A stretch of DNA of 64,000 bases from Mizuhopecten yessoensis (Eukaryota). The notes under the pieces are model-generated. The model saw only the letters and a program-made list of their open reading frames with translations, was not told where the DNA came from and did no database searches. The position numbers and the translations under genes are program-made. Below are positions 33,081-60,461 of the stretch, piece by piece. The DNA is taken from positions 381,912-445,911 of the forward strand of contig NW_018408803.1 of assembly GCF_002113885.1 (NCBI RefSeq), written 5' to 3'. Each line of letters starts with the position of its first letter. Position 1 is the stretch's first letter.

Positions 33081-34706
33081 ATGGCTACTTCCCTAAACAA
33101 AGGTCAGATTCCTTTCCGTGTCAAAGGTCAGACGAACTGTGTTCACCACAAAGGGGGACAACTGGACCTTTACTGTGAGGAATGCCAGCAGCTTGCTTGT
33201 ATTAATTGTCTTTCTTCTGTACATCAGAAACATTCTTTGTGTAGCCTTAGTGAACTCACTACTCAAAAGAAGGAAGACATTCAAAATTTTATAGACAAAT
33301 CTGAGAAAATTGACCTTGTACAAATTGACCAGTACATCACTGTTACGGATACACATCTAAAGGACAATGCCGGCAACTTTGAGAAACTTTCACACCAGTT
33401 AAAGACACAAACTAACAAATTAAAACTGGATCTTGACCTCCTAACAGCTGAGATTCTGTCTCTTTATCAACAAATTGAGGAGGATAACACCAAGCTACTA
33501 CAATCCTACAAACAGGACCTGGAAATGTACAGTACTCAGCTAAAAAATCAAGTACAAGAATGCAAAAAAGCCCTTCAGCGAGGCTCTGACATACAAATCT
33601 ATGACACAGGATGTGATATTCAATCTCCTGTCACAATCCCCGTAAAACCTGCCCTGGGTACCGCTAGCTTCAGTCCTAACCAAAATCCTCAGGGTGACCT
33701 GAAACAAGCTTTTGGAGAAGTAAACATTTCAGGTCAAGGTCAGGGGCAAGCCTTTCAAAGTCGTGATCGTTCAGTTGGAACATCTGCTGGATTATTCTCC
33801 ACACAACCTCAGGCAAAACTAAAGATAAAGACACCCTCTACTACTCAACAGAGATCAAATGGAAGAAAGGAAGTGACCAGTCCAGTAGATACCCTGTTGT
33901 CTCAGACCAAGATGTTGGGGGAGTGGGAGTCTCTATGTGGCATCACCTCTGTATGTCCCACCACTGATGGTCAGGTGTGGACCAGTTACTTTTCCAGTAA
34001 GACCTTAACTCTCCTGGACAGGAACGGGAAAGTTATACAGGAGGTTAAACACAATACTAAGATCAGAGACATAAGTCTGTCACCCACAACCAACACAATG
34101 TGGGTCTGTGACTGGGAAAACCACATCATAGAGCTTGTGTCAGGACGGCTGGTACATCGATTCAGCTACGGGGAGGAACCACGGTGTATCTGTATTACAG
34201 CTAGTAACCATGTCATTGTGGGGATGGACAAACACATCTCAATATTCACCACTAAAGGTACATTGGTACATACTACATTGGCAGCAGGGACGTGGAAACC
34301 ATTAGTGCATGCACCATACAGGATCTCAGAGTGTCCTGTCACTCACAATGTTGCAGTGGCTGACATTGACGGTGGTAAAGGGAAACCATGTGTAGTTGTC
34401 ATGGACACAGATTTCAAGGTACTATTTGTATATGGTGGTGAAGTCCCACTTACATATCAACCAACATCAAAGTCAGGAGGTAAACAATTTTACCCCTGGG
34501 GTGTGGTGTATGACAGTGTGGGTAACCTGGTCATAGCGGACTATAACAAAAAGCGTGTCCTACTCATCAGTGGGCGTGGTGAGTTCCTCAGGAACATACA
34601 CAGAGACAACAACATACCACGGGCTGTTGGTGTAGACAAGGCGGATGTCCTGTGGACTGTGTTTGGGTTTAACAATGTCAAACTTCTACAGTACAGCAGG
34701 TTGTGA
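33081..34706 (+). CDS. RING-less TRIM-like protein (B-box2, coiled coil, S/T/Q linker, NHL-like beta-propeller), copy 1, 541 aa
   Basis: B-box CVHH-x-LYCEECQQLACINCLSSVHQKH; heptad-rich helix; blades such as PWGVVYDSVGNLVIADYNKKRVLLISGRGEFL. The ATG at 33081 aligns with paralog starts and follows an acceptor (ttttag); the likely 5'UTR donor is caag|gtgagt at 32684. AATAAA at 34834. Confidence 0.93.
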   Translation: MATSLNKGQIPFRVKGQTNCVHHKGGQLDLYCEECQQLACINCLSSVHQKHSLCSLSELTTQKKEDIQNFIDKSEKIDLVQIDQYITVTDTHLKDNAGNFEKLSHQLKTQTNKLKLDLDLLTAEILSLYQQIEEDNTKLLQSYKQDLEMYSTQLKNQVQECKKALQRGSDIQIYDTGCDIQSPVTIPVKPALGTASFSPNQNPQGDLKQAFGEVNISGQGQGQAFQSRDRSVGTSAGLFSTQPQAKLKIKTPSTTQQRSNGRKEVTSPVDTLLSQTKMLGEWESLCGITSVCPTTDGQVWTSYFSSKTLTLLDRNGKVIQEVKHNTKIRDISLSPTTNTMWVCDWENHIIELVSGRLVHRFSYGEEPRCICITASNHVIVGMDKHISIFTTKGTLVHTTLAAGTWKPLVHAPYRISECPVTHNVAVADIDGGKGKPCVVVMDTDFKVLFVYGGEVPLTYQPTSKSGGKQFYPWGVVYDSVGNLVIADYNKKRVLLISGRGEFLRNIHRDNNIPRAVGVDKADVLWTVFGFNNVKLLQYSRL

Positions 34707-35509
34707 AATCTGGACAAACCACCATGAATATACAGAAACAAACACTGAAAGGATGCTGAAAAAAATATCTTGAAAAATTTCAACCCAAGATGTAAACTAC
34801 GGACCTGAGAAGTGTACCAACGCATTAGACAGTAATAAACATGTACGACAATTATTGAAATGTTTAAATTAAAAACAACAACAAAAAATCTAATAATTAA
34901 TTTAATCACAAAAAAACTGAACATGATGTTTGACGATAGTGATGAACTTCGGAAGAACTTCTCGGCCTAAAATAATATTTGACTTTTTTTTAGAATCCAA
35001 ATTCTTTGATGAATATCTATTCCCGCTGAAATGTAGTAAGTTGACTTGATATATTCTGCTGCCATTTTAAGCTGACCTGATGTCACAATATGGCTGTCGA
35101 ATGAATATGTGAATATTTTTTATATAACTAGTTTTAACGATCAGCTGTTCAATTCAATTACTCGAACATGTGTTATGCGTAAATAAAAGTTTTTGTTTGT
35201 CATCAAGTAAGATCTGTATTGTTTATTTCAAATGTTAGTATATATCTCATTACTCCAGCAAACTGCAGGCCACATTTCTTCACTCTCAACCTGTCTGTTC
35301 ATAGTTCATAAGACCATTTCGTTTAAAAACGTTGAAATATTTTAAATACGTGACTTTAAATATGGATCAAGGTCATCAGGTTATATTATTGAAAACACTG
35401 ATGAGAAAACATTTAACATTTATCGTTCAGGTGTTATTTTGTTCAAGTAAACTATTCAATCCATAACTAAAGGACCTTTTATCATTCAAGTAAGATCTTA
35501 ATAATTTCT

Positions 35510-36125
35510 TCAGTGTCCGGAATTAAAAGGTTCCACTGAAATATATTAAAGTGTCGAGGCAAACAATCAGTGTTCCATTTACAGAGAAATCCAAGTCTCA
35601 AGCCTACCGAGGTTACCCTGTAATAACAAAGTGTCCGGATTAACGAGGTTTCGATGTATATACAACGTGTTCGGAATAACTAGATTCCTCTGTAATAACA
35701 AAGTGTACAGACTAACGATCTTCCACTGTAATAACAATGTTACCGTACTTATGAGGTTCCCCTGTAATAACAAATTGTGCGGACTAACGAGGTTCCCATC
35801 TAATAACAAAGTGTCTAGACTACAAGGTTCCGCTACCATAACAAAGTGTCAGGACAAACGACGTTCTGCTGTGATAACGTGTCTGGAATACAGGTTCCGC
35901 TGTAGTGACAATGTGTCCGGACTATCGAGGTTCCACTATGATAACAAAGTTTAAAGACTTACGAGGTTCCGCTGTTATAACAAAGTGTCCGGACTAACGA
36001 GGTTCCGCTGTTATAACAATGTTTCCGGACTTACGAGGTTCCGCTGAAATAACAATGTGTGCGGATTAACGAAGTTTCCGCTATAATTACAAAATGTCCG
36101 GCTTATTAATATTCCATTGTACAGA
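35510..36125. repeat. 36-bp satellite (taataacaaagtgtccggactaacgaggttccgctg), array 1
   Basis: Tandem periodicity; appears as a 12-aa repeat in the ORF track. Confidence 0.9.
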
Positions 36126-36584
36126 GTAATCAAAGTATATTTATTTTTTCCATTTAAATCGCACAATGATAACACAACAGTAATTCAATGTTTCCAATTT
36201 ATAGAATTACATCATAAAACACAAACTGACCATTGAAATGTCATATACCAGAATAGCTTTTATTTTGAATAATTTTAGAAGTGATGGTGGCAAGAATTTT
36301 ATTGAAAATACCAATACCCATGAATTTAACATTTACCGTTCCGTAGCAAACAATTTTATAATCTTAATAATTTTACTTACTCTGATCGTTTATAGAACTT
36401 AAAAATAATAATAAGAATTTTAGTACAAATTTCTCGCCCTACTCGAGAAAAAAAGACCAATAAAGAAAATATCTTTCTACTACAATGGTTTCTTTGTGAT
36501 ATGCTAGTCTCTTGTTTTATTAATTCTATTATTGTAATTTTACGCGATTAAATCGCACGTGCAAATAGTCCAAATAATGTTTCA

Positions 36585-37230
36585 ATTATTGCAGAAAATA
36601 TCATGCAAAAACGTGAAGAAAAAAACAAACAATGCGATTCTATCATGGTATCTTCCGGGCAAGGATAGAGAAGCCGAGGTGAATCCCCATCCTTTTACCC
36701 CCTTGAACGGAAAATGGACTAAACCTGTGTTTATTGCCGTGAATGGGGAGCCTGCAATCGAAAGGGGTAGATAGCTATAGTACACATCGGGAGAGAGCCA
36801 GGTACCGGCCTATTTAGTAGCCCCAGTTAGACCCGGTGGGTTGTATAAAGCTCCCTTGGGAACTACGGACTCGGGTGCATTGCATGTAAAAGGAAAGGTT
36901 GAGAACTCGTCAGTGTTATAAACACAAGGAAAGTTTTGTAGAAATTGTGACTTTTACACCAATAGTGAAATTGACCGATTGTTTACTGTGATGCTCAGAG
37001 CGTAAGGGAATGACTGATAGCCCAGACAAGGGTGGAAATAGAACGTGTTACTTATACATGTTGTTATAGCAGCCATCTAACGTTATATATCATTGCGATA
37101 GGTAGAAAAGATTCAAACCTAAGACACTTACAGGTTAAAGCACCCTTTATGTTTAGTAATCCAAATGATTTACTGTCGAACAGGGATGGGTGGGTTAGAA
37201 TTGGTAAACACATTAATTTAGAAATATAGA
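36585..37230 (+). pseudogene. Decayed coding-like module, possibly a TIR-domain remnant (also at ~38790, 48470, 54685, 55463, 62555)
   Basis: Acceptor-like ttgcag/ttgtag in several copies. Frameshift-joined readings give KDRE.WVN..LLPLEWKLDY.C...RD, ESQV..YLV.P and PVILGD..KLPWEL. Stops and frameshifts occur in all copies; the identification is by eye only. Confidence 0.3.
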
Positions 37231-39327
37231 GGAGTACAAATTAATTTCATATTTAATTAATTATAAAGTCTTAAATCATGAACCGTGCCACTACTCAAAA
37301 GCGATAACTGGCCATCAAGGTTACAGCAAACCTCGGAAATGTAAAATCAGAATCTACCATCTTGTATCTTGAAAGATGACCGTAACACACGTACAGATGA
37401 TAGAACCTTTAACGTTTGTAATAGATACAGTATGTAAGTAATGAATGACACTGCATCATACAGCTGTGTCGTCCTTATAGGTGATGCTCGTGGTCAAAAC
37501 GTTGGAAATTCATATTGTCTAAACTACTGTTGAAACCGAGAGGAAGGTGCTTTGAACCCCATAATTTATCATTTAAAATAAAAGAAGATTACCGGTTGAT
37601 TTCAATTCAATAATGTGAAAAGGAAACAACTCAATTTGAATCTCGTTGGTGCTATTTCTCACTATATCACTAAACTATATTTCTAATTGTGCCCTTTTTA
37701 TTTAAAAACCAATGTTAACTTCATGTGTATTTCAAGTCTTTGTTCAAAACATTAAACAATTTAGGTGCGCAAAAGTAATTCATCTGAATCTGCGATTTTC
37801 TTTCAAAATAGATCGTAAGGCCTGTCTTTGTGTAAGTTAGTGCAATATATATACAGTTACCTGTGCTTAGTGCATCTAAACTCTATAACTGATACGGGTA
37901 CACGTGCATTGTCTAATTAACAACTTACATGTGTGAGTGACATAAGTATACACCATATACGTATCGAGATTTTACTTGATACATAGTCAGCTTGATACAG
38001 AAGACGATTATAAAAAACAATAGGTGTATCGTTCTAGTTTGATTAATATATTTAGATAAAACGTTCTTTAAAAATCCATTGATATGTCTCGTGCCTCAGT
38101 TAAGCTAACCAGGACGTTCTGAGTCATACCACCTGTGTGTGTACATTTATTTTTGTTATCTTTTAGAAAACTGCAGTAACGTGTGATTTGTAAAGAAAAC
38201 CTGTTTAAGTTATTAGCTATTTCACTCACAGTGACAAGTATATTGTTACATAGTCAGCTTTATACAGACCACGCCTATACAAAGGTACGTGTATGTGTCT
38301 AGTTTTATTGATTGTTCAAAAACATATCGGTTTAAATGCATTGATATATCCCGTGCCCAAGTAAAGCTAACGAGGACGTTCTGACTGAGACATACCACTA
38401 GTGTATTGTGTTATCTTTTTAGAAAACCGTGTAATTACGTGTACTATGCAAAGAATTTTTTTTAACTAATAACTGTTTTCACTTCATCGTCGTTAGAAAA
38501 AAAATATACATGATAACGATTTTTTCAACCTAACTGAGACAAAAGGGCCAATGAAGAAAACAATGGTTTGTTGTAATTTCCTATCTCATATTTTGTTATT
38601 GTTTCGTTTTAATTAAACCAAATTAAGTCTCAGGTGCAAGATAATTCCGAAAAAAACCACCCACCTATGTTGATGAAAACATTTTAAAGAACAATTTACT
38701 ACGGATTTACGCGTTGTTTTTTATTATGCTTTATGTTGCCTTGAAAGCTTAACTTTTTTTAAATAAGCAGGATTAACCATAGATTCCCTACTTGTAGAAA
38801 ATATTACGACAAAAACACCTTGATGAAGATTAGAAGTGAAGATATTATTCCAAATAATGAAATCAAGAATGGCATCTGTGCGGCAAGGTAGAGAAAGTGA
38901 GGTAATTTACCATCCGTTTTCCCCTAGAATGGAAATAGGACTTATCCTCTGTATGTTGCCGTGACTGAAAGCCTTTAATGGAAAGGGTAGCCAGCTATAT
39001 AGTACAACGGGAGAATTACTTCAATTGAATGCCCTAAATTTCTTTTTAGAGATATCTGTTTTTAATTTAGAGATATATTTATTTCAATCAAATCCATTTT
39101 TTCTCCTTCTTTTTATATGAGGCATCTCTCAATGATGTCTCTATAAGTATAAAATAGGATAGCTCTTTCACATTTAAAGATATCTCTTTTTGCATTGTAG
39201 ATATCAGCATTTCGTTAAAGCTATGCCTTTTACGTTGAAAGATATATATTTTTTACTTTGAAAACACCTCTGTTGGTATAACATGTTACGTTGACTCGCC
39301 ATATGGGTAGCTCTCTTGAGAACTACA

Positions 39328-39443
39328 GACTCGGGTACACTCGTACAACAGACTGGGGTACACTCGTACACCATACTCGGGTACATTCGTACAACATGCT
39401 CGAGTACACTCGTACAACAGACTCGGGTACACTCGTACAACAG
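39328..39443. repeat. 23-bp minisatellite (agactcgggtacactcgtacaac), ~5 copies
   Basis: Tandem periodicity. Confidence 0.9.
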
Positions 39444-40213: not shown

Positions 40214-40590
40214 TGGCTACGAGAACTTCCTGACGTTTTAGACTGGATCAAAATGACGCTTCAGTGGCTGCACAACAAGACGGGCTACTTCAAACCTCGG
40301 TACCACAGCAGCATATTTACTGGGAATGAAGTTAAAGGGAAGTCCCAGTGATTGACAAGAATGCTTTAAACCTTTAAGCTTAGGTATCACAGCAGCATCT
40401 TAACAGGAAGTAAGGTTCAGAGGAAGCTCACGGTGAAATATAAGACTGATTCAAAATTCGGTACAACAGCAGCATTGTTACTGGAAGAAGGGTTTACAGG
40501 GAGAGCACGGTGATTTATAATACTGCCTACAATTTAGATAAGATAGAAAACATGCCTACAGAAAGTAGGTTTAGGGGGAAATAACGATAA
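40214..40590 (+). pseudogene. Decayed copy of C16orf89 exon 5 followed by ~75-bp repeats of the exon end
   Basis: tacgagaacttcc...gactggatcaaaatgacgcttcagtggc matches 29089-29140; acceptor lost, frameshift and stop. Confidence 0.85.
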
Positions 40591-41138
40591 TAATAAATAA
40601 ATAATAATATACATCCATTGTATAGAACCCTATATAATTACTTTACTATAATTTGCAAAATTACTCTAAGGTGCTTTACGACATATGAATAATGGTATTC
40701 CTAGAGTGACAGTTATACACATCGTAGATGAAAAAAAGGAATTCAAATAAACATTACATATTAGGTAACAAGACATTTTCTTCATAATTAGTTATGCACA
40801 TATACATATAACCAATATGACGTCTGCGCAAAAGAGCCTAAAATGCAGACGTAAAAAGTGTGAAGGAAATGAAATGAAAATGTTTAAAGGAAAAAAAGTC
40901 AATTCATAGAGACATTTCACAGAATCGGATTTGTCATGCAATATCATAAAATATATAATATGCATTTGTTAAATAAAGAAGTAATGTTACAGGCCGTATA
41001 CTGTTTTCAATATTAATTTAAACAAGAAAAGTCATTGACAGGTAAAAACTTTGTTTTCAATGTTATCCTATGTACGCTACACAACGCGTTACATTTAATT
41101 GTCGTACAACTTAAAACTCATGTACGCGCTCATTCTCG

Positions 41139-41489
41139 CATCCTCAATACTCCAGGGATTATGCTCACTTTCGCTCTCTGCTTCCCTGGAAAATGTCAAA
41201 GCAAAATCGATGGCACGCGACTAGCTATTTGAAAGGTGTAGAAAAAAACTGACTAATCGTTTGATGGATAGCTGTCGTTTGAAGATTACAGATAAACGGT
41301 AACCCACTTTAAAGCCGGTCAATTTTACCGTTACGCGACCGCGATATTCATTGTATGTTCATCAAATGATCAGACTAGTCTTCTTGCCTCTTCGACAAGG
41401 TGCCGTACACTGAGCCTTTGATTTTGCTACGACATAATCCAGTGGTGCAGAGAGCGAAAGTGAGCATAATTCCTTGAGTATCGATCATG
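41139..41489. mobile_element. CATCCTCG MITE copy 8 (duplicated with its unit)
   Basis: Family sequence. Confidence 0.8.
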
Positions 41490-41566
41490 GTTCGCTACGC
41501 TACGCAACTCGTTATTTGTAGTTGCTCATTATCGTACACCTAACCACACTCTGTTAAATTTCACAG

Positions 41567-41917: not shown

Positions 41918-42812
41918 ACAAGAGGCCCATGAGCCTTAATGGTCACCTGAGTTATTTAAAAACTGATGTTATCGATGCTGCCAAATGAAAAAGAAATAAT
42001 TTTGTAACAAAGGTAACTTGAACTACATGTAATGCAAAAGTAGTGTGAAAGATCTGGGTAGTATATGTTCTGTCAGTCAGCTGAATTATGGTTAAGTACC
42101 TTAAGACCCTTCTATCTATGAAGAGTATTTGATTCTACCATATCTGGATCTTGAGAAGACGCTTTTTTGGCCCCGCCCCTCAGGCACCTGGGGGCTGGGG
42201 ACCATTTACTTTACAATTAAGCTATAGTAAAGTTTACCCCCTCCCCAGGGGGAAACGTGATACCCGTGGGTCATGAAATTCACAATTTTGGTAAAGCACT
42301 TTAAGCCCCTTCCATCTTTGAAGAGTATTTGATTCTACCATATCTGGGTCTTGAGGAGAAGATTTTTGAAATGTTAGTCAATTCAACCCTTTTTAACCCC
42401 ACCCATCAGCCCCTGGGGGTCAGTCAGGGCTGATATGTGCATACCAGCAAACTTCTATTCGATGCTGGTAATGCTTACCAAGTTTGAATTAATTCCAATG
42501 GAGATTAAACAAATGTTGGTCTAAAATGTGATTTCCCTATATAAACAATAGTAAAATGTATCCCATCATAGCATTTGATCCTACCATATCTGGGTCTTGA
42601 GCAGAAGATTTTTGAAATTTCAGTCAATTCGATCCTTTTTTGCCCCACCCATCAGCCCCTGGGGACCATATAATTTCATTAAAATTGGGTCAGGGGTTAT
42701 GGAGAAAAAGTCGAAAATGTAAATTGTTTACGGACGCACAACGGACGACGGATGACGCCGGACAAAAGGCGATCGCAATAGGTCACTTGAGACTTTGTCT
42801 CAGGTGACCGAA
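41918..42812 (-). mobile_element. Helentron-associated non-autonomous element (HINE)
   Basis: subTIR ggtcacctgag at both ends; IR ggtcacttgag..ctcaggtgacc; (gacg)n microsatellite; terminal hairpin aggcccatgagcct; internal ~240-bp repeats. Inserted in an A-run with no TSD; the empty site is visible at ~31072. Confidence 0.85.
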
Positions 42813-43240
42813 AAATTTCACCTTGTCGTTTTTTTACGTCATTTACGGATTTAAACAGTTCCACCGAAAAATGGTTTTTAACAGAAAACATCTCTTATTA
42901 TTTTATGACATAATCTGCTTTGATGAACGTGAATGTGCATGTGTTGTTGTTCGTTGTCTGTGGACGGCCTGACATTGTAAACAAGGTGAGTGACTATACG
43001 TGACTACAAATGTACTGTGGTTCCCAAACGGGCACCAACCACTGGATTTAGTAAAACAAAACACACTTTTAGTTGACACTAAGGATTATGAGAAATTCCT
43101 GATTTAGGGACACATTTTTCATTGTGGTCGTTTTTAACGGTATTAGATACCATGTAAACAGCTATACAACATACTGCTTCACCGTGAAATCAATTTTCTA
43201 TAGTCAATAGTCCTCAACTGTTTCACATCTTTTTATCACA

Positions 43241-44875
43241 ATGGCAACATCACTGCACAAAGCGCAAATCCCTTTCCGGGTTAAAGGTCAAACCACCTGT
43301 ATTCACCACAAGGCGGAACAATTGGACCTTTACTGTGAAGAATGCCAACAACTTGCATGTACTAACTGTCTGTCTATTGTACATAAGAGCCATCCATTGT
43401 GTAGATTAGATCAAATAACTCCCAAAAAGAAAGAAGACATCCAAAACTACATAGACAAAACCGAGAAAGCTGACCTGGTACAAATCGACCAATACATCAC
43501 TGCTACTGAGGAACATTTAAAGGACAATGCAAATAACTTTGAAAAACTTTCACATCAGTTAAAGACGCAAACTAACAAATTAAAACATGATCTTGACCTA
43601 ATTACAGCTGAGACGTTGTCTCTCTATCAACAAATGGAGGAGGATAACACCAAACTACTACAAACCTACAAACAGGACCTGGAAATGTACAGTACACAGC
43701 TGAAACAACAAGTGCAAGATTTGAAGACAGCACTTCAGCGGGGCTCTGACATACAAATCTACGACGCAGGATCTGAAATTCAATCTTCTGTCACACCCCC
43801 TGTTAAACCTACCCTGGGTACCGCTAGCTTCAGTCCTAACCGAAATCCTCAGAATTTTCTGGAACAAGCATTGGGAAAAGTTAACATCTCAAGTCAAGGT
43901 CATGGTCAAGCCTTACAAGAACATTATCGTTCAGTAGGATCATATGCTGGGCAAGGATTACTCTCTACACAACTCCAGTCAAAACTAAAGGTTAAGACAC
44001 CATCTACTCAACAGAGATCAAACGGAAGAAAGGACGTGTCCGGTCCAGTGTTTACCTTGTTGTCTCAAACCAAGGTGTTGGGGGATTGGGAGTCTCCATG
44101 TGGCATCACTTGTGTATGTCCCACCACTGATGGTCAGGTGTTGACCAGTTACTATGGCGGTGACACCATAACTCTCCAGGACAGGAAGGGCAAAGTTATA
44201 CAGGAGGTTAAACACAATACTTTGATAGGTGACATAAGTCTGTCACCTACAACCAACACACTGTGGGTCTGTGACTGGCTAAACAACCTCACAGAGCTCG
44301 TGTCAGGACGACTAGTACACAGATTCAGTACCAGGAAGACACCAAGGTGTATCTGTATTACAGCTAGTAACCATGTCATTGTAGGGATGGTCAAACATAT
44401 CTCCAAATTTACCACAAAAGATAAACTGGTAGTTACTACATCAGCTAAGGGAAAGACACTAGTGTGTACACCACACAGGATCTCAGAGTGTCCTGTCACT
44501 CACAATGTCGCAGTGGTTGACTTGGATATAAAATATAATGGTGGTGAAGGGAAAGCACATGTTGTTGTCATGGACACAGATTTCAAGGAACTATTTGTAT
44601 ATGATGGTAAAGTCCCACATACCTTTAAATCAACATCACAGTCAGGAGGTAAACGATTTAACCCCTCTGGTGTGGTGTATGATAGTGTTGGTAACCTAGA
44701 CATAGGGGACTATTACAACAACCGTATCCTACTCATCAGTGGGCGTGGTGAGTTCCTCAGGATCATCCACACAGATGACGACTGGACACGGTCTATTGGT
44801 GTAGACAGGGAGAATGTCCTGTGGGCAGCGTTTGGGTTTAACAATGTCAAACTACTACAGTACAGCAGTGTGTGA
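43241..44875 (+). CDS. RING-less TRIM-like B-box/coiled-coil/NHL-like protein, copy 2, 544 aa
   Basis: Intact ORF collinear with copy 1 (45 of the first 60 aa identical); AATAAA at 45003. Confidence 0.93.
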   Translation: MATSLHKAQIPFRVKGQTTCIHHKAEQLDLYCEECQQLACTNCLSIVHKSHPLCRLDQITPKKKEDIQNYIDKTEKADLVQIDQYITATEEHLKDNANNFEKLSHQLKTQTNKLKHDLDLITAETLSLYQQMEEDNTKLLQTYKQDLEMYSTQLKQQVQDLKTALQRGSDIQIYDAGSEIQSSVTPPVKPTLGTASFSPNRNPQNFLEQALGKVNISSQGHGQALQEHYRSVGSYAGQGLLSTQLQSKLKVKTPSTQQRSNGRKDVSGPVFTLLSQTKVLGDWESPCGITCVCPTTDGQVLTSYYGGDTITLQDRKGKVIQEVKHNTLIGDISLSPTTNTLWVCDWLNNLTELVSGRLVHRFSTRKTPRCICITASNHVIVGMVKHISKFTTKDKLVVTTSAKGKTLVCTPHRISECPVTHNVAVVDLDIKYNGGEGKAHVVVMDTDFKELFVYDGKVPHTFKSTSQSGGKRFNPSGVVYDSVGNLDIGDYYNNRILLISGRGEFLRIIHTDDDWTRSIGVDRENVLWAAFGFNNVKLLQYSSV

Positions 44876-45769
44876 CGACTGGACAAAATATCATGTGTAT
44901 ATAAAGTAACAAACACTGAAAGGATGATGGAAATTGTCTTGAAAAATTTCAACACAAGATGTAAACTACGGAACTAAGAAGTGTATCAACGCAAAAGATA
45001 CTAATAAACATATACGACAATTATTGAAATGTTTAAATTAAAAAACGACAATTCAGATAATTAATTTAATTTCAAAAGAACTGAAAAAGATGTGATGTTT
45101 GACAATAGTGATGACTTTAGGAAGAAATTCGAGGCATAGAATAATATTTAACTTTTTCAGAATCCAAATTCTTCGATAAATATCTATTCTCGCTGAAAAA
45201 TATTTGGTAAAAATGTAGTATGTTTATGTTTTCTGCTGCCATTTTGAGCTGACCTGATGTTACAAAAAATGGCTGTCGCGTGAATATGTGAATATGTTTT
45301 ATATATCTAGTTTTAACGATCAGCTGTTCAATTCAATTACTCAATCTGTAAATAAAAGGTTTTGCTTGTTTTCATTACAGTAAGATCTTAATCAGCTATT
45401 TTATATGTTATTATATATCCCATTACACCAGCAAACTGCAGGCCACATTTCTTCACTCTCAACCTGTTCATGGTTCATTAGAACATTGCGTTTAAATACA
45501 TTGAAATATTTGACCTACTTGACTTTAGATATTGGTCAAGGTCATTATTTTCACAAGCTTGATAGTACATAGTATGACCATAGCGTCTTATATTCATAGG
45601 AAAAAGTTTAAGTGGGGAAAAAAGTTTCTGTATCAGATTCAAGGTCATAAGAGTCTTATTTGAGAAAACACTGAACATTTATCGCTCAGCTTTTATTTTG
45701 TTCAAGTCAATGACTCAATATATAACAAAAGGGGCATTTTATATTTCCGTAAATTCATAATCATTTTTA

Positions 45770-47940
45770 AAGTGTCCGGACTTACGAGGTTTCCTTGTAA
45801 CATCAAAGTGTCCAGGTAAACAATTAATGTTCAATTTACACAGTAATCCAAGTCTCCAGCCTAACAAGTTATCCTGTAATAACAAAGTGTTGGGAATAAC
45901 AAGGTTTCGCTGTAATAAAAAAATGTACGGATTAATGAGGTTCTGTTGTAACAACAATGTTTCCGGACAAACGAGTTTCCACTGTTATAACAAATTGTAC
46001 GGACTATCGAGATTTCCCTCTAATAAAATAGTGTCCGGACTAACGAGGTTCCCTTTTAATAACAATGCGTCCGGACTTACGAGGTTTCTCTGCAATAAAA
46101 TCGTGTCCGGACTAACGTGATTCTCCAAGGTAATAACAATGTGTCCGGACTAACGAGGATACACTGTAATAACAATGTGTCCAGAATAACGAGGGTCCTC
46201 TGTTATAACAGTGTCCGATCATTCGAGGTATCCGTAATAACAAGGCTCCGCTGTAACAAAAAAGTGTCAAGACAATGTATCTGGACTTACGAGGTTTCGC
46301 AGTATAAACAAAGTATCCGGACTCATTGATAAACAAAGCCTTACAGGAAATATCAAATTCCAATCAAGTATACCAAATAATTGAGAAAGTTGTAATGTTA
46401 GGAAGCTGTCATTTCAACCAAGAATATAATGCAGTAATCAATTTGTTTGTCTTTACTACAAAGTGGCACATATGGAAAGAAAAAAATAAGATAAAATTTG
46501 ATAATGACTATGAAGTTGCTGACTTCACACAGCATATTTTGAAGTGTGTTAAACAAGAACTTAGGTTTACAATAAATGCAATTGAAAGCGTTAAAAGATA
46601 TCAACAATTGGGGAATAAGTTACAAGCAATTTTTGCAAATTGAAATTGAAATCAACGTAAGAGCAAATGAGTAGAAAGAAAGAAGATGAATAAGAGAAAA
46701 AAATGGTCAGAGTGAGGAAGATGAGCGTACAAATTAGAGCGAGTCGGAGAATGAATATGCTACATGTACTATGTACAGGGACTGGGCCAGGCCCCATCCT
46801 GGTATTCCCTATTGTATTCGGGATAATAAACCATAAAATAGAAAAGAAAAAAAAGTATCCGGACTAAATCAGTGCCACTGTAAGAACAAATTGTCCGGAC
46901 AAAAGAGGTTCCGCTGTAATAACAAAATAACAAAATGTACGAACTAAGGTGGTTTCCCTGTAATAAAATAGTGTCCAGACTCACGAGGATTCGATGTAAT
47001 AACAATGTGTCCGGACTAAAGAGGTTCCGCTGTAATAACAAAGCGTCCGAACTAACGAGGTTACCCTATAATAACGAAATATCCGGACTAACGAGGTTCA
47101 ACTGTAATAACAAAGCATCCGGACTAACTAGGTTTCCCTCTTATAACAAATAAGGACTAAATCATTTCCACTGTAATAACAAAGCGTCCAGACTTACGAG
47201 ATGCCCCTGTTATAACTACGTGTGCAGACTTACGAGATTCAGCTGTAATATAAATGTGTTTGGACTAGCAAGGTTTCCCTGTAATAACTGAAAATCCAGA
47301 CTAACGAGGTTCTGCGGTAATAACAATGTTTCCAGACTAACGAGGTTCCCTGTATAAACAATGTGTGCGGACTAATGAGGTTCCTCTGTTATAGCATAGT
47401 GTTCAGACGAACGTCGTTCCCCTTTTAAAAATAATGTATTTGGGCTAACGAGATTCCCCTTTATTAATAAAGTGTCCAGACTTACGAGAATTTGCTGTAA
47501 CAAAGTGTCCAGACTTACGAGATTCTTCTGTTATAACAAAGTGTCCAAACTTACTAGATTCCCCTGTTATAATAAAGTGTTCAGACTTACGAGATTCTCT
47601 TGTTATAATAAAATGTCCAGACCTACGAGATTCTCCTGTTATAATAAAGTGTCCAGACTTACGAAATTCTTCTGTTATAACAAAGTGTCCTAACTTACTA
47701 GATTCCCCTGTTATAACAAAGTGTCCGGACTAACGAGGTTTCGATGTAATAACAAAGTGTCTGGACTAACGAGGTCCCCTGTTATATCAAAATGTCCAGA
47801 GAAACAAGTAATGTTCAATTTTTCAAAGAAAAGTCCAAGTTTACGGCCTCACGAGGTTCCCCTGTATTAATAAAGTATCCGTCCTTACAATGTTCCATTG
47901 TATCGAGAAATCAAAGTATCAAGACTGACGAGGTTACCTG
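45770..47940. repeat. 36-bp satellite, array 2 (expanded; interrupted by a LINE fragment)
   Basis: Same unit as 35510-36125. Confidence 0.9.
46324..46851 (+). mobile_element. 5'-truncated L1/Tx1-type LINE (ORF2 C-terminus, 3'UTR, A-rich tail)
   Basis: ORF 46326..46643 has KWHIWKEKNKIKF (the K..IW..RN...F motif of L1/Tx1 ORF2 ends); AATAAA and A-tail; 14-bp TSD aaagtatccggact (46310-46323/46852-46865). Confidence 0.85.
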
Positions 47941-49994: not shown

Positions 49995-50337
49995 CATTCT
50001 GGATAACCAGGGGTTACGCTCACATCTCTACCCCTGGAATATATGTGATAGCAAAATCGAAGGCACGGGACTAGCTATTTGATTATTTTAAGGTAGATAA
50101 AACTTACCAGCCGCTCATCTGATATTTGTCCTTTGACAGTTTTAGAGGAGCGACACCCGACTTAAAAGCCAGTCAATTTTACCGTTTCGCGACCGAACGT
50201 TTTTTTTATGCACATCAAAGGATTCGATGAAACTAGCCTTATCGTCTCATCAACAAGATGGTGCTCATTGAGCCTTCTATTTAGCTATAACATATCCTAG
50301 GGGTGCAGTGAGCGTGATCCCTTGAGAATCGAGGATG
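49995..50337. mobile_element. CATCCTCG MITE copy 9, in a partial duplicate followed by the exon-6 acceptor remnant (~50405-50420)
   Basis: Family sequence; downstream gtacaactaaccacattctgttacatttcacagaagtga matches 30672-30710. Confidence 0.75.
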
Positions 50338-50509
50338 ATACGCCCTACACAAAGTGATATGTAAAGATTTCCATAGTTGTACAACTAACCACATTCTGTT
50401 ACATTTCACAGAAGTGATCATTCTTCAGCTATTGCTGTAGATATACTTTAAACACCCCCTAACACGGAGAAAACGAAACTGAGTTGTGATTATGTGTGTT
50501 CAATCCCTT

Positions 50510-55880: not shown

Positions 55881-57048
55881 TGGGTTATCTATTAGGGTAA
55901 ACTATTTCTTTATTACAATTAAAGATAGCTCTTCCACTTTTAAAGATATCTCTTATATTTTAGAGACCTACATTTATTTTAAAGATATTACATTAAAAGA
56001 TAGCTCTTTCTTATTTATAAATGTCTGCATTTGCAATGTAGATACCTATCTTCTATTATTGTTAACCCTATTACATTTAAAGATATATGTAATACGTTTT
56101 TTACTCCTCCATTGTTATTAAATGTCAAGTTGACTTGGGCGCTCATGAAATAGGGAAAAAACCAGGAGAACTATTACTCTTACACAAATAGTGAAATAGA
56201 CAGTGTCAACAGTGACCATAAAAACGTTTATATTTTCTTTACAATCAAGCATAAAAACGATATAAGATATTTGAAACTGTATTCAATACTGGCATTAATA
56301 ACGAGTTTTTTAACCTGCTGGTGACTGTTTCTCGTGGGAACAAAATAAAGAAAACTAAAGAAAAAACAACAACATGTAAAGATATATTTCAAGGCAAGCA
56401 TTGGGGAAGGGGACAGGAAAGACATTGTTTTGTAAATAAACTACTAAATTATTAAGATATTTCAAACTGTATTATATACCACAGCAGAGATATACAAAAA
56501 CGTCTGTTGACAGCGAGCTCTTTACGTTCTAATACAAATATCTTCTAATGAGGTAAACAAAGCGCAAGTAGGGAGATGAAGCTTTCCTATATATTATTAT
56601 AATGAAATAGGACGCCAAGTGGCTGTGACAACATCTGATGTAGGAGGCGTGTATTACGATCTATTTTGGACACTTTGAGACCTCTCACCCATATGTGTTT
56701 GCTCTTGGGTATCAAAGCATATAAATCAGTCAACTCTTTATAAATCCTCCCTGATATAACGTCATTCCCATTCTTATTGCCAAAATTTAGCTGGAAAAAT
56801 ACTGGCGTCAATTACGAGGTTTTATTGTAAGTATGGAAAGCGCAATGTATTGAAGTTCTCTATATTAAACTCGATAATTTGTCTTTCTTTGGAAAGTGGT
56901 CCATTAACCTACTGTTCACTGTTTCGCGGAATCAAAACACAAATAAGTTTAAACACAAATATGTAAAAACTTATTAAAAGGCAAGCATTGTGGAGAAGGA
57001 CAAGAAAGAAAGTGTTTTGCAAATAAACTTCTACAACTAGCAAAATGT

Positions 57049-57170
57049 TTGGCTACGAGAACTTCCTGACGTTAGACTGGATCAAAATGACGCTTCGGTG
57101 GCTGCACAACAAGACGGGATACTACATCAGCATATTGACTGGGAATTACGTTAGAGGGAAGTCCCAGTGA
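57049..57170 (+). pseudogene. Second decayed copy of C16orf89 exon 5
   Basis: Translates as GYENFLTLDWIKMTLRWLHNKTGY; original acceptor deleted. Confidence 0.85.
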
Positions 57171-58005
57171 TTGACAAGATTGCTTCAAAACTAAGACGGT
57201 AGGTAAAAAGGAATAACACAGTGATTTTACAGACTGCTTTAAGCTTAGATAAATAATAATATACATCCTTTGTATAGCACCCTGTATAATTACTTTACTA
57301 TCATTTACAAAATTACTCTATAGCACCCTATATAATTACTTTACTATCATTTACAAAATTACTCTAAAGTGATTTACAACATTTGACTAATAATATTCCT
57401 ACAGTGACAGTTATACATATCGTAGAAAAAAAAGGAATTCAAATCAGCATTATACAATAGGTAACAAGACATTTTCTGCATATGCATGTAACCAGATATA
57501 CAGGGTTGTGTGTCCATGACGTCTGCGCAAGAGAGCCTAAAATGCAGACGTTGAAAGTGTGTGTTTTTTTAGCCAGTACTTTTCACTTTCTGGTAGCAGA
57601 TGGAAAGCTATTCCACAACGTGGCCGAAACTTGTCCAGGGCACCGGTTACCATAGGTACAAGATTTTGGGACAACCAACAAGGATTCTGAATATGACGAT
57701 GCAAATGTTTAAAGGAAAAAAAAAAGTCAATTCATAGAGACATTTCACATAATCTGAATTGTCATACAGTATCATAAAATATATAATATGCATTTGAAAT
57801 GTAAACAAGTAATATTACAAGCCAATACTGGAACTTTAAGGAAAAAATACAACAAAATAAAATTCGAAAAATATTAATTTAAACAAAAAAAATCCTTGAC
57901 AAGTAAAACTTTGTTTTCAATTTGATCCTATACACGCTTCACATCATGTTACATGTAAATTTTTATTATCGCACAACTTACGACTCCTGTACGCGCTCAT
58001 CTTCG

Positions 58006-58110
58006 CATCCTCGATACTCCAGGGGTTACGCTAACTTTCGCTCTCTGCACCCCTAAAATATGTCATAGCATAATTGACGGCATGAAACTAGCTATTTGAT
58101 TTATCTCAAG
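58006..58110. mobile_element. CATCCTCG MITE copy 10 (left arm only)
   Basis: catcctcgatactccaggggttacgct...; truncated at the 39-bp array. Confidence 0.75.
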
Positions 58111-58388
58111 TACAAAAGCTGTAAACGTGAACAGGTGACAGTGGTCAAGCACAACAGCTGTAAACGTGTACAGGTGACAGAGGTCAAGCACAACAGCTGT
58201 AAACGTGAAAAGGTGACAGAGGTCAAGCACAACAGCTGTAAACGTGTACAGATGACAGAGGGCAAGCACAACAGCTGTTTACGTGTACAGGCGACAGAGG
58301 TCAAGCACAACAGCTTTAAACGTGAAAAAGGTGACAGAGGTCAAGCACAACAGCTGTAAACGTGAACAGATGACAGAGGTCAAGCACA
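58110..58388. repeat. 39-bp minisatellite (cacaacagctgtaaacgtgaacaggtgacagaggtcaag), ~7 copies
   Basis: Tandem periodicity; unrelated to the intron-1 39-mer. Confidence 0.93.
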
Positions 58389-59045
58389 CGAATCAAACAC
58401 TTAAATTTAGCATTTATCTCATGTAATCAATATTACGTGTAATGTCTGTGTTTTATATAATATTACATATTCATTTAATAGTAACGATGTCCACAGTAGT
58501 AATGAAATTTAAAAAAAGTCTATGGTCACGAAACCGTATTCGCTGTTACCATACTTGATATCTAATTCACGTTATGTCAGCTGATCACTGCTACAGATCG
58601 TCGGCGCCTCGTACCACCAGGAACTGTTAAATGCGCTGCGGCACACTGATCTGTGAAGTAGCTCATATTACACCACCCCTATATTTGGCAGGTAGATAAT
58701 AGCATCCTTGACGTCAGGCTGAGGAAAGCACACCCTTACCTGGCTAGGTTGTATTGTCATAATACTGTCTGGCCGGGTAATTAATTAAACACCCACCTTC
58801 TACAACATAATTACCCCGACGGGCGCTAACCACTAGATTTAGTGAAACAAAGATTTTAGTGGACACTTAGGATTATGAGATTACTTTGGATTTTTATTCC
58901 TGATGTAGCGACAAACGTTTCTTTGTGGTCGTTTTTAACAGTGTTAGATACAATGTAAACAGCTATACAACAAACTGCTTCACCGTGAAATCAACTTTTA
59001 ATAGTCAATAGTCCTCGACTGTTTCAATTGTTTTTTTATATCATA

Positions 59046-60461
59046 ATGGCAACATCCATGCAAAAAGCGCAAATCCCTTTCCGGGTTAAAGGCCAAATCA
59101 CCTGTATTTACCACAAGGAGGGACAACTCGACCTTTACTGTGAAGAATGCCAACAACTTGCTTGCATTAACTGTCTGTCTACTGTACACAAGGGCGATCC
59201 TTTGTGTAGATTAGATGAAATTACTCCTCGAATAGAAGAAGACATCCGAAACTACATAGACAAAAACGAGAAGGCTGACCTGGTGCAAATCGACCAATAC
59301 ATCACTGCTACTGAAGAACAGTTAAAAGATAATGCAAGCAACTTTGAAAAACTTTCATTCCAGTTGAAGACACAAACTAACAAATTAAAACACAACCTTG
59401 AGCTGCTAGCAGCTCAGACTCTGTCTCTCTATCGACAAATGGAGGAGGAAAACTCCAAGCTACTACAAACATACAAACAGGATCTGGAAATGTACAGCAC
59501 TCGGCTAAAACAACAAGTACAAGAATGTAAGGTTGTACTTCAGCGTGGCTCTGACATACAAATCTACGACGCAGGGTCTGAAATTCAATCTTCCGTCACA
59601 CTCCCTGTAAAACCTACCCTGGGTACCGCTAGCTTCAGTCCGAACCGAAATCCTCAGAATTACCTGGAACAAGCTTTGGGCAAAGTTAACATCACAGGAC
59701 AAGGTCTTGGTCAAGCTTTACAAAGACATGGTCGTTCAGGTGGATCATCTGCCGGACAAGGATTACTCTCCACACAACCTCGGGAAAAACTAAAGGTAAA
59801 GACATCCTCTACTCAACAGAGATCAAAAGCAAGAAAGGACGTATCCAGTCCCGTATATACCCTGTTGCATCAGACCAAGGTGTTGGGGGAGTGGAAGTCT
59901 TTATGTTATATCACTTCTGTATGTCCCACCACTGATGGTCAGGCATGGACCAGTTACTTTGGCAGTAACACCTTAACTCTCCTAGACAGGAAGGGAAAAG
60001 TTATTCAGGAGGTTACACACAATGCTGAGATCATAGACATAAGTCTGTCACCCACAACCAAGACACTGTGGGTCTGTGACAAGGAAAACAACACCACAGA
60101 GCTCGTGTCAGGACGACTAGTACACAGATTCAGCACCAGGAATAAACCACTGTGTATCTGTATCACAGGTAGTAACCATGCCATTGTAGGGATGGCCAAA
60201 CACATCTCAAAACTCACCACTAAAGGTACATTAGTACTTACTACATTGGCAGCAGGGACTGGGAAACCATTAGTGTGTACACCATACAGGGTCTCAGAGT
60301 GTCCTGTCACTCACAATGTTGCAGTGGCTGACTTGGATAGTAAACCTCATGGTGGTGAAGGGAAACCACGTGTTGTTGTCATGGACACCGATTTCAAGAA
60401 ACTATTTGTATATCATGGTAAAGACACACATACAAATAAATCAATGGTCAAATGTGTATAA
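59046..60461 (+). CDS. TRIM-like copy 3, C-terminally truncated (471 aa; probable recent pseudogene or truncated isoform)
   Basis: Collinear with copies 1 and 2 up to ~60444; the last ~80 aa are replaced by MVKCV*. The final B-box His is changed to Asp (HKGD). Confidence 0.85.
   Translation: MATSMQKAQIPFRVKGQITCIYHKEGQLDLYCEECQQLACINCLSTVHKGDPLCRLDEITPRIEEDIRNYIDKNEKADLVQIDQYITATEEQLKDNASNFEKLSFQLKTQTNKLKHNLELLAAQTLSLYRQMEEENSKLLQTYKQDLEMYSTRLKQQVQECKVVLQRGSDIQIYDAGSEIQSSVTLPVKPTLGTASFSPNRNPQNYLEQALGKVNITGQGLGQALQRHGRSGGSSAGQGLLSTQPREKLKVKTSSTQQRSKARKDVSSPVYTLLHQTKVLGEWKSLCYITSVCPTTDGQAWTSYFGSNTLTLLDRKGKVIQEVTHNAEIIDISLSPTTKTLWVCDKENNTTELVSGRLVHRFSTRNKPLCICITGSNHAIVGMAKHISKLTTKGTLVLTTLAAGTGKPLVCTPYRVSECPVTHNVAVADLDSKPHGGEGKPRVVVMDTDFKKLFVYHGKDTHTNKSMVKCV

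What the first reader, a model, noticed from the sequence alone, without database searches (positions are those of the whole stretch)
33081..60461. RING-less B-box/coiled-coil/beta-propeller paralogs with variable blade loops: candidate diversified intracellular receptors
Seen: the scaffold is conserved (LYCEECQQLAC, VCPTTDGQ, DISLSPTT, ELVSGRLVHRFS, SECPVTHNVAV). Differences cluster in inter-strand loops (copy 1/2/3): YFSSKTL/YYGGDTI/YFGSNTL; NTKIRD/NTLIGD/NAEIID; DWENHII/DWLNNLT/DKENNTT; YGEEPRC/TRKTPRC/TRNKPLC; DIDGGKG/DLDIKYNGGEG/DLDSKPHGGEG; and RDNNIPRAV/TDDDWTRSI in copies 1/2. Established: NHL propellers bind RNA or protein on their top face, and TRIM clusters under pathogen pressure vary in the ligand domain (e.g. 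TRIM5 SPRY). Inference: a lineage-expanded sensor or adaptor family lacking its own E3 RING. This is the best candidate here for an under-described system.
Basis: partly seen in the sequence, partly recalled or inferred. Interest (0 to 1): 0.7.

Follow-up and report, generated by a model that had tools for sequence, protein, structure and literature searches.

The report
Scallop RING-less TRIM-NHL genes, hypervariable face
Three tandem Yesso-scallop genes (two intact, one cut short) belong to a family of over a hundred RING-less B-box/coiled-coil/NHL-propeller proteins in which amino-acid change is concentrated, with dN/dS above 1, on the one propeller face that binds ligands in known NHL proteins. 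That is the pattern expected of a diversified intracellular recognition repertoire, but the ligand and any immune role are untested.

Summary
The window is Mizuhopecten yessoensis contig NEDP02005476.1. It carries three intronless paralogs: B-box, about 125 residues of coiled coil, a disordered linker and a six-bladed NHL propeller. Copies 1 and 2 are intact. Copy 3 is cut off after blade 4. A fourth copy lies 5 kb beyond the window.

No RING is present. No frame of the window holds a RING pattern, and none of the 120 listed relatives has a RING domain. An in-frame stop lies 11 codons upstream of the copy 2 start.

By propeller topology these lie on one face, the one opposite the termini, which binds RNA in LIN-41 and Brat.

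In 98 paralogs these loops hold 2.06 bits of entropy, against 1.02 for the opposite face. In 14 scallop coding sequences omega is 1.5-1.8 for top loops (LRT against 1, p about 1.5e-5) and about 5 for B-C loops alone. It is 0.4-0.5 for bottom loops and 0.2-0.3 for the B-box and coiled coil.

The family forms species-specific clades with pseudogenes and mosaic recombination.

Immune function, ligand and effector mechanism remain inference. Copy 2 is almost silent in three RNA runs. The scan reached the same reading earlier on two other loci of this genome.

The parts
33081..34706 (+). Copy 1: intact intronless CDS of 541 aa (B-box about 33129-33245, propeller about 33891-34703).
   Evidence: ORF. 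Pfam zf-B_box 1.3e-7 and NHL 7e-8. The annotated gene is a single CDS in NEDP02005476.1.
43241..44875 (+). Copy 2: intact intronless CDS of 544 aa (B-box 43289-43405, coiled coil 43406-43780, linker 43781-44053, six-bladed NHL propeller 44054-44872).
   Evidence: The AF2 model has propeller pLDDT above 90. The best structural matches are the NHL domains of TRIM2 and TRIM3, TM 0.74-0.77.
44093..44842 (+). Span of copy 2 that holds the 12 top-face loops. Residues: 285-290, 304-308, 325-328, 346-348, 364-367, 384-385, 400-410, 428-439, 455-474, 491-494, 512-515, 532-534. The conserved strands and bottom loops lie between them.
   Evidence: Strand map from DSSP of the model. Entropy per loop. Omega 1.5-1.8 for the class and about 5 for B-C loops. 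The 30 most variable propeller positions all lie in or next to these loops.
59046..60461 (+). Copy 3: a 3'-truncated paralog. Homology to the family ends at 60443 in the D4-A5 loop. Blades 5 and 6 are missing, and the ORF runs 5 unrelated codons to a stop.
   Evidence: The NCBI model LOC110464034 (P0030, 399 aa) splices out of it after ...LTTK.
42923..42985 (+). Putative short 5' exon of copy 2, ending in a GTGAGT donor. It holds a 21-codon upstream ATG frame with one Cys and no RING. The homologous element of copy 1 is at about 32622-32684.
   Evidence: Conserved block in alignment A2. Motif positions. Translation. Splicing is not shown: a contig of run X1 is colinear with the genome from 42841 to 43213.

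Best explanation
The locus is part of a tandem, birth-and-death array of RING-less TRIM-like genes in the Yesso scallop.

Each protein has one B-box, a long helix of the TRIM coiled-coil type and a disordered linker. Its C-terminal six-bladed NHL propeller has a conserved scaffold and a conserved bottom face. The loops of its top face (B-C and D-A loops of every blade) are being diversified by positive selection.

Shown here:
- the domain architecture;
- the absence of a RING;
- the face-specific variability;
- omega above 1 on that face and well below 1 elsewhere;
- species-specific expansion;
- pseudogenes and mosaic recombination between paralogs.

Inferred:
- The proteins dimerise through the coiled coil as TRIMs do.
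- They use the variable top face to bind different, fast-changing ligands inside the cell, most plausibly components of pathogens or other genetic parasites.
- Lacking a RING, they act by B-box or coiled-coil assembly and sequestration, or by recruiting a separate effector such as a RING-bearing TRIM partner.
For: Architecture:
- Pfam B-box and NHL hits.
- The AF2 model has a helix at 56-167 and a 24-strand propeller with pLDDT above 90.
- Foldseek's best hits are the NHL domains of TRIM2, TRIM3, Thin, Lin41 and Brat.
- The family profile hits TRIM71 NHL at 3e-18 and the TRIM3 and KAP1 B-box/coiled coil at 8e-10 and 1.5e-8.

No RING:
- No RING-type Cys/His pattern in six frames of the window.
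- 0 of 120 listed relatives carry a RING Pfam domain.
- An in-frame stop lies 11 codons before the ATG of copy 2.
- The annotated genes are single-CDS.

Face assignment:
- B-C and D-A loops are on one side by topology.
- The chain ends (start of strand D6, end of strand C6) are on the other side.
- In TRIM2 the C-terminus is on the bottom surface (PMC9634614). In LIN-41 the RNA-binding surface is opposite the N-terminal entry (PMC5908797).

Variability:
- Entropy is 2.06 bits for top loops, 1.02 for bottom loops and 1.12 for strands (Mann-Whitney p 2e-9).
- All 30 most variable propeller positions are top loops or strand ends next to them.

Selection:
- Seven independent pairs give omega 1.51 for top loops (binomial p 0.008), 0.38 for bottom loops, 0.51 for strands, 0.28 for the coiled coil and 0.23 for the B-box.
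- GY94+F3X4 gives omega 1.76 for top loops, with 2dlnL 17.4 against omega = 1.
- Ungapped top-loop columns give 1.80. B-C loops alone give 5.0 with 2dlnL 29.9.

Family dynamics:
- The window copies sit in a clade of 17 sequences, all from Mizuhopecten. Species labels change 12 times on 98 tips, against 44.9 when shuffled.
- Frameshifted fragments of the family lie in four other loci.
- The N-terminal and propeller trees disagree. Copies 2 and 4 are 94% identical over nt 1-450 but about 84% in the propeller.
- Top loops are rich in aromatic residues (8.9% against 2.0% in bottom loops).
Against: - No ligand, induction by infection, localisation or effector is known for any member. No paper in the searched library treats these genes.
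- Copy 2 has 0-2x depth in three RNA-seq runs.
- The selection tests use class-level omega on 14 paralogs that recombine. Recombination can inflate likelihood-ratio tests.
- The D-A loops alone are not significantly above 1 (omega 1.3).
- Face assignment rests on topology and an AF2 model, not on coordinates or a solved structure.
- The only N-terminal signalling-domain fusion seen (P0070, DED-like) is below Pfam's cut-off and is unique.
Confidence: 0.55

Rival explanations
1. They are Brat/LIN-41-like RNA-binding regulators. The top face binds RNA, and diversification changes RNA target specificity, whether for host mRNAs, transposon RNAs or viral RNAs. They would then be post-transcriptional repressors rather than protein-ligand sensors.
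For: The closest folds are RNA-binding NHL domains, and the variable face is the face that binds RNA in Lin41 and Brat (PMC5908797, PMC4015489). Brat also lacks a RING (my own knowledge).
Against: The top-loop net charge is not uniformly basic. It averages -0.3 with sd 3.9 and ranges from -13 to +6 over 98 paralogs. The RNA-binding surface of LIN-41/TRIM71 is strongly positive (PMC9634614). Only one blade keeps a canonical NHL sequence signature.
Confidence: 0.2
2. They serve a non-immune conflict or a regulatory role. One possibility is RING-less decoys or modulators that heterodimerise with RING-bearing TRIM-NHL ligases. Another is players in reproductive or self/non-self recognition. Their loops would then co-evolve with host partners.
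For: RING-less TRIMs have been proposed to regulate orthodox TRIMs by hetero-interaction (PMC2533329). An earlier scan note reports TRIM32-type RING/B-box/NHL ligases in the same genome (untested here).
Against: Nothing in the window links the genes to such partners. The coiled coil, which would mediate heterodimerisation, is the most conserved part (omega 0.28-0.32), and the diversity lies in the ligand face. Over a hundred species-specific copies is more typical of host-parasite conflict.
Confidence: 0.15
3. This is neutral decay. Surface loops of redundant duplicates simply drift under relaxed constraint in a birth-and-death family, without any recognition function.
For: Copy 3 is truncated, and frameshifted fragments are common near other members. 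Copy 2 is barely expressed. D-A loops have omega near 1.
Against: Omega is significantly above 1 for the top loops and about 5 for B-C loops. The equally exposed bottom loops have omega 0.37-0.47, and synonymous divergence is the same in all propeller classes (dS 0.22-0.24). ORFs of about 540 codons stay open in 13 of the sampled paralogs.
Confidence: 0.1

Closest known systems
TRIM-NHL proteins (TRIM2, TRIM3, TRIM32, TRIM71/LIN-41, Thin, Mei-P26)
   Same: Same order of B-box, coiled coil and C-terminal six-bladed NHL propeller, closed by the N-terminal strand. They are the best structural and profile matches.
   Different: No RING and no filamin domain. A single B-box. Over a hundred lineage-specific intronless copies instead of a few conserved genes. 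A hypervariable top face under positive selection that is not uniformly basic.
Drosophila Brat / C. elegans NCL-1 (RING-less B-box/coiled-coil/NHL)
   Same: RING-less TRIM-NHL architecture. The ligand (RNA) is bound on the top face (PMC4015489; the RING-less state is from my own knowledge).
   Different: Brat has two B-boxes, is a conserved developmental regulator and has a conserved basic RNA-binding surface. The scallop genes are a fast-evolving multigene family.
TRIM5alpha and the group 2 TRIMs (SPRY/B30.2)
   Same: Lineage-specific tandem expansions, with positive selection focused on the surface loops of the C-terminal ligand domain while the B-box and coiled coil stay conserved (PMC2533329).
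   Different: The recognition domain is an NHL propeller, not SPRY. There is no RING, so no intrinsic E3 activity. No pathogen ligand is known.
Pyrin/TRIM20 and other RING-less TRIM-like proteins (TRIM14, TRIM16)
   Same: The tripartite motif has lost its RING (domain table in PMC2533329) yet still acts in innate sensing (for pyrin, PMC2533329 mentions only immune-related disease; the sensing role is my own knowledge). One Pecten relative (P0070) has a DED-like exon where pyrin has a PYD.
   Different: The C-terminal domain is different. The DED-like fusion is sub-threshold and unique. The window's genes have no N-terminal domain at all.

Membership tests
TRIM (tripartite motif) family | N-terminal RING finger | tested here: not met
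   No RING Cys/His pattern in six frames of the window. No RING Pfam hit in the three copies or in 120 relatives. A stop lies 11 codons upstream of the copy 2 ATG.
TRIM (tripartite motif) family | B-box zinc finger followed by a coiled coil | tested here: met
   PF00643 hits at 1e-7 to 4e-7. The zinc ligands C20, H23, C32, C35, C40 and H48 are invariant, and C43 and H51 are at least 90% conserved, in 98 sequences. The model has a helix at 56-167. The profile matches the B-box/coiled coil of TRIM3 and KAP1.
TRIM-NHL subfamily | C-terminal six-bladed NHL beta-propeller | tested here: met
   The model has 24 strands with pLDDT above 90. TM is 0.73-0.77 to the NHL domains of TRIM2, TRIM3 and Brat. 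TRIM71 NHL is hit at 3e-18. Only blade 5 keeps the canonical sequence motif.
TRIM-NHL subfamily | Filamin/Ig domain between coiled coil and NHL (present in TRIM2, TRIM3 and TRIM71; absent in TRIM32) | tested here: not met
   There is no Pfam hit in that region, and residues 216-269 are disordered in the model.
RNA-binding NHL proteins (Brat, LIN-41) | Conserved, positively charged top surface | tested here: inconclusive
   Top-loop net charge averages -0.3, sd 3.9, range -13 to +6. This counts loop residues only.
Diversified innate recognition families (TRIM5/finTRIM-like pattern) | Lineage-specific tandem expansion with pseudogenes | tested here: met
   Four tandem copies lie at this locus. 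There is a 17-member clade made only of Mizuhopecten sequences, and other species-specific clades. Frameshifted fragments occur in L004, L006, L007 and L010.
Diversified innate recognition families (TRIM5/finTRIM-like pattern) | Positive selection concentrated on the ligand-binding surface | tested here: met
   Omega for top loops is 1.51 (p 0.008) and 1.76 (2dlnL 17.4). For B-C loops it is 5.0 (2dlnL 29.9). Bottom loops, strands, coiled coil and B-box range from 0.2 to 0.8.
Diversified innate recognition families (TRIM5/finTRIM-like pattern) | Binds a pathogen component, or is induced by or protective in infection | not testable with these tools
   Copy 2 is nearly silent in three unchallenged RNA runs, although paralogs are expressed. 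No literature exists on these genes.

The most novel reading that the evidence does not exclude
Scallops, and perhaps molluscs in general, carry a germline-encoded repertoire of cytosolic receptors built on the NHL propeller. This would be a convergent counterpart of TRIM5alpha and finTRIM. In it, twelve top-face loops act like complementarity-determining regions. Recombination between paralogs shuffles constant B-box/coiled-coil modules with variable propellers. Signalling works without an intrinsic E3 ligase.
Probability: 0.35. Interest if true: 0.8.

Novelty: new variant of a known kind. Interest (0 to 1): 0.62.

Why it matters
Bivalves lack adaptive immunity. They are known for expanded innate gene families, including B-box and TRIM genes (PMC8382680), and TRIM genes are associated with herpesvirus and Perkinsus outcomes in oysters (PMC9437489, PMC9892467). 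What these expanded TRIM-like proteins recognise, and with which surface, is not described in the library searched.

This analysis gives a concrete, testable map. It names twelve loops on one face of an NHL propeller, with about two hot positions per blade. It also shows that the NHL domain, usually treated as a conserved RNA-binding module of developmental regulators, can evolve like the SPRY domain of antiviral TRIMs.

The map makes ligand hunts, loop swaps and association studies in scallop aquaculture directly designable.

Tried and rejected
- **Per-site counting on reconstructed ancestors (SLAC-like).** I used seven phylogenetically independent pairs and class-level codon models instead.
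- **Upstream RING exon.** Searched by pattern in six frames, by the annotated gene models, by translation upstream of the ATG and by reads. None was found. The conserved upstream block with a GTGAGT donor holds only a 21-codon frame. Its splicing is unconfirmed because the X1 contig runs colinear through it.
- **Expression.** The three raw RNA runs give almost no depth on copy 2. Most reads on the stretch come from repeats at 41973-42957, or from paralogs, as shown by loose ends at 44115, 44514 and 44876. Nothing can be said about induction.
- **DED-like N-terminus of Pecten P0070 as a clue to signalling.** The hit scores 27.2 bits against a cut-off of 35.9. The domain is encoded by a separate upstream exon. 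It has no second example among proteins of comparable length. I keep it as a lead only.
- **Literature.** None found a paper on these loci, or on positive selection in NHL loops of bivalve TRIM-like genes.
- **The search of protein representatives.** Not used. The claim does not rest on an absence of relatives.
- **Copy 3 beyond its break.** Not read through. It was analysed only up to 60443.
Full report
**Where the window comes from.**
The three ORFs match annotated genes of Mizuhopecten yessoensis (Yesso scallop), assembly GCA_002113885.2, contig NEDP02005476.1. The window corresponds to record positions about 381912-445911. It is eukaryotic DNA of 30-46% G+C with many dispersed and tandem repeats.

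**Observation.**
- ORFs at 33081-34706, 43241-44875 and 59046-60461, all on the + strand, encode proteins that are 73-79% identical.
- tblastn with copy 2 finds exactly these three places in the window and nothing else.
- Copy 3 is truncated. Its homology stops at 60443, which is residue 464 of copy 2. The ORF then runs five unrelated codons to a stop, and the missing part is not elsewhere in the window.
- NCBI annotates copy 3 as a 399-aa product that splices out after ...LTTK (P0030).
- The copies sit in a tandemly duplicated unit of roughly 10 kb. The flanks of this unit, including a 36-bp minisatellite, are also duplicated.
- A fourth intact copy (P0002, LOC110464016) lies about 5 kb beyond the window's end.
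- A fifth close relative (P0003) lies 250 kb away on the other strand, inside a gene of the NRF/acyltransferase type.

**Architecture.**
- Pfam finds a B-box in all three copies and an NHL repeat in copies 1 and 2. It finds nothing else above threshold.
- In 98 aligned family members the zinc ligands C20, H23, C32, C35, C40 and H48 are invariant. C43 and H51 are at least 90% conserved.
- An AlphaFold2 model of copy 2, built on that alignment, has mean pLDDT 80.6. It shows the B-box, one long helix (56-167) followed by short helices, a disordered stretch (216-269, pLDDT below 50) and a 24-strand propeller with pLDDT above 90.
- Foldseek ranks the NHL domains of TRIM2 and TRIM3 first (TM by target 0.73-0.77). 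Thin, Lin41, TRIM71, Brat and Mei-P26 follow.
- The family profile hits TRIM71 NHL at 3e-18. It hits the B-box/coiled coil of TRIM3 at 8e-10 and of KAP1 at 1.5e-8.
- Only blade 5 keeps a canonical NHL sequence signature.

**No RING.**
- A RING-type Cys/His pattern uninterrupted by stops occurs in none of the six frames of the whole window.
- None of the 120 listed relatives, from four scallop species, has a RING Pfam domain. They all begin at the same MATS-type start.
- The annotated genes are single coding exons.
- In copy 2 an in-frame stop lies 11 codons upstream of the ATG.
- A block conserved between copies 1 and 2, about 260-400 bp upstream, ends in a GTGAGT donor and may be a 5' exon. 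Its only frame is 21 codons with one cysteine.
- Contigs of run X1, whose RNA status is a guess, tile 42841-45322 and nothing beside it. They are colinear with the genome through that block. The intron is therefore unconfirmed, and no read joins the coding exon to anything upstream.

**Which face varies.**
From the DSSP strands I assigned four strands (A-D) to each of six blades. The N-terminal strand (272-284) serves as strand D of blade 6, as in LIN-41 (PMC5908797).

In a four-stranded meander the A-B and C-D loops lie on one side and the B-C and D-A loops on the other. The chain enters at the start of a D strand and leaves at the end of a C strand, so both termini are on the A-B/C-D side. 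In TRIM2 the C-terminus is on the bottom surface (PMC9634614). In LIN-41 the RNA-binding "upper" surface is opposite the N-terminal filamin domain (PMC5908797). The B-C/D-A side is therefore the top, ligand-binding face.

All of its conserved strings are strands with A-B or C-D loops.

**How strong is the pattern.**
- In 98 paralogs the mean column entropy is 2.06 bits in top loops, 1.02 in bottom loops and 1.12 in strands. Top against bottom gives Mann-Whitney p 2e-9. Bottom against strands is not different.
- All six B-C loops (2.14-2.85 bits) and five of the six D-A loops (1.77-2.60) exceed every A-B and C-D loop (0.29-1.51). The D3-A4 loop (1.46) falls just inside that range.
- Of the 30 most variable propeller positions, 23 are in top loops. 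The other 7 are strand residues next to a top loop, and none is on the bottom.
- In the window's own three copies, 56% of top-loop positions differ against 24% of the rest of the propeller (p 4e-7).

**Selection.**
I extracted 14 coding sequences of M. yessoensis from the window and ten fetched loci.

Pairwise Nei-Gojobori values among the window's copies give top-loop omega of 0.97-3.7. Bottom loops give 0.13-0.46 and the coiled coil 0.16-0.26.

| Class | Seven independent pairs, summed | GY94+F3X4 on fixed tree |
|---|---|---|
| Top loops, all | 1.51 (binomial p 0.008 against neutrality) | 1.76 (2dlnL 17.4 against omega = 1, p about 1.5e-5) |
| Top loops, ungapped columns | not done | 1.80 (2dlnL 13.3) |
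| Top loops, short loops only | not done | 4.6 (2dlnL 27) |
| B-C loops | 1.83 (p 0.02) | 5.0 (2dlnL 29.9) |
| D-A loops | 1.34 (p 0.07) | 1.3 (not significant) |
| Bottom loops | 0.38 | 0.47 |
| Strands | 0.51 | 0.82 |
| Linker | 0.64 | 0.63 |
| Coiled coil | 0.28 | 0.32 |
| B-box | 0.23 | 0.22 |

- dS is alike in the three propeller classes (0.22-0.24).
- Top against bottom loops gives an odds ratio of 3.6, p 1e-7.

Caveats:
- The tests are class-level, not site-level.
- The paralogs recombine.
- The classes come from a model, not a solved structure.

**Family dynamics.**
- The word search returned 149 relatives. The 120 listed are all from Pectinidae, and at least 58 are from M. yessoensis. 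They are named "uncharacterized" or TRIM2/3/45/71-like.
- On a FastTree of 98 members the window's copies fall in a clade of 17 sequences, all from Mizuhopecten (support 96).
- Species labels change only 12 times, against 44.9 in shuffles. The expansions are therefore largely species-specific, or the genes are homogenised within species.
- Frameshifted or fragmentary copies lie next to intact ones in four other loci.
- The tree of the N-terminal half groups copies 2, 4 and 3. The propeller tree pairs copy 1 with P0003 and copy 3 with P0009.
- Copies 2 and 4 are 94% identical over the first 450 nt but about 84% in the propeller. dS is 0.05 in the B-box against 0.2-0.3 downstream. The genes are mosaics made by gene conversion or unequal exchange.
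- The ESM Atlas lists many mollusc clusters of 50-84 "hypothetical proteins" with B-box plus NHL and no RING family. The architecture is therefore widespread in molluscs and unnamed.

**Ligand type.**
Top-loop residues are not uniformly basic. Net charge averages -0.3, sd 3.9, range -13 to +6. They are richer in aromatic residues than bottom loops (8.9% against 2.0%). This fits varied ligands better than a common RNA-backbone interface, but it does not exclude RNA.

**Expression.**
In three RNA-seq runs of 2026, about a fifth of each read, copy 2 has 0-2x depth. Reads that touch its conserved parts carry loose ends with a related but different sequence (135-172 reads in X24), so at least one paralog is expressed. 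No challenge data could be examined.

**Comparison with what is known.**
- The proteins are TRIM-like, with B-box, coiled coil and NHL in the canonical order. They fail the RING criterion and lack the filamin domain.
- By architecture the nearest known thing is Brat/NCL-1 (RING-less B-box/coiled-coil/NHL; my own knowledge).
- By evolutionary behaviour the nearest are the group 2 SPRY TRIMs such as TRIM5alpha (PMC2533329).
- Bivalve expansions of B-box genes and TRIM associations with disease outcomes are published (PMC8382680, PMC9437489, PMC9892467).
- I found no paper describing face-specific positive selection in an NHL propeller, or these loci.

**Earlier notes of this scan.**
Two follow-ups on other pieces of this genome (s1-519437, s1-512427) reached the same reading. 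I found these only after my own analysis. They are not independent evidence for the biology, but they show that the pattern is family-wide.

A third note (s1-528118) reports CaaX tails in a branch of the family. In my set P0008 ends in CIIS and P0014 in CIIL. The window's copies have no such tail.

**Verdict.**
The structural and evolutionary parts of the interpretation hold up well, and the immune-receptor function remains a well-motivated inference. I rate it a new variant of a known kind.

Noticed in passing
window 20424-23071: A 39-bp satellite of 68 copies, 89% matching, with strong G-over-C skew (GC skew up to 0.44). It lies inside the span of the upstream DUF4735 gene.
   Followed up: partly
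window 1-31385 (+): The neighbouring annotated gene encodes a 343-aa DUF4735 protein. Its last exon ends at about 31385. It is unrelated to the finding.
   Followed up: no
window 35604-36101, 45874-46217, 46926-47797: A 36-bp minisatellite lies 0.9-1 kb downstream of copies 1 and 2. It is part of the duplicated unit and is expanded behind copy 2.
   Followed up: partly
window 1258-1517, 4704-5014, 5108-5508, 7172-7534, 26828-27061, 30307-30687, 41138-41548, 49995-50422: A dispersed repeat of about 260-400 bp (SINE-like) is present on both strands. The stretch 41973-42957 upstream of copy 2 attracts very many RNA reads that run on into unlike sequence, so it is an expressed repeat family.
   Followed up: partly
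window 8568-8966: A 20-bp tandem repeat of 20 copies that creates spurious ORFs on both strands.
   Followed up: no
L001:10001-11641; L002:10001-11689: A fourth tandem copy (LOC110464016) lies 5 kb past the window's end. A close relative (LOC110464014) sits 250 kb away on the opposite strand, within the span of a gene of the NRF/acyltransferase-3 type.
   Followed up: partly
L006:10001-11629 (P0008); L010:10001-11689 (P0014): Two relatives end in CaaX-type tails (CIIS, CIIL), which suggests prenylation in a sub-branch. The window's copies end in ...QYSRL and ...QYSSV without it.
   Followed up: partly
L011:6001-6309 and 8239-9894 (Pecten maximus P0070): One gene model joins a DED-like upstream exon to the B-box/NHL exon. 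The Pfam hit is 27.2 bits, below the cut-off of 35.9. No second example was found among proteins of similar length.
   Followed up: yes
L004:12720-13138, L006:18650-20690, L007:14569-15648, L010:18204-19862: Frameshifted or fragmentary copies of the family lie beside intact ones, consistent with birth-and-death turnover.
   Followed up: partly
window 43241-43700 versus L001:10001-10460: Copies 2 and 4 are 94% identical over the first about 450 nt (dS 0.05 in the B-box) but about 84% in the propeller. This looks like a 5' gene-conversion tract.
   Followed up: partly
window 32622-32684 and 42923-42985: The conserved upstream block carries an ATG-initiated 21-codon frame with a hydrophobic core (..LLFVVCGRPD..). 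In copy 2 it would be in frame with the main ORF if it were spliced to the AG of the stop 11 codons upstream. In copy 1 it would not, if the AG just before the start is the acceptor.
   Followed up: partly
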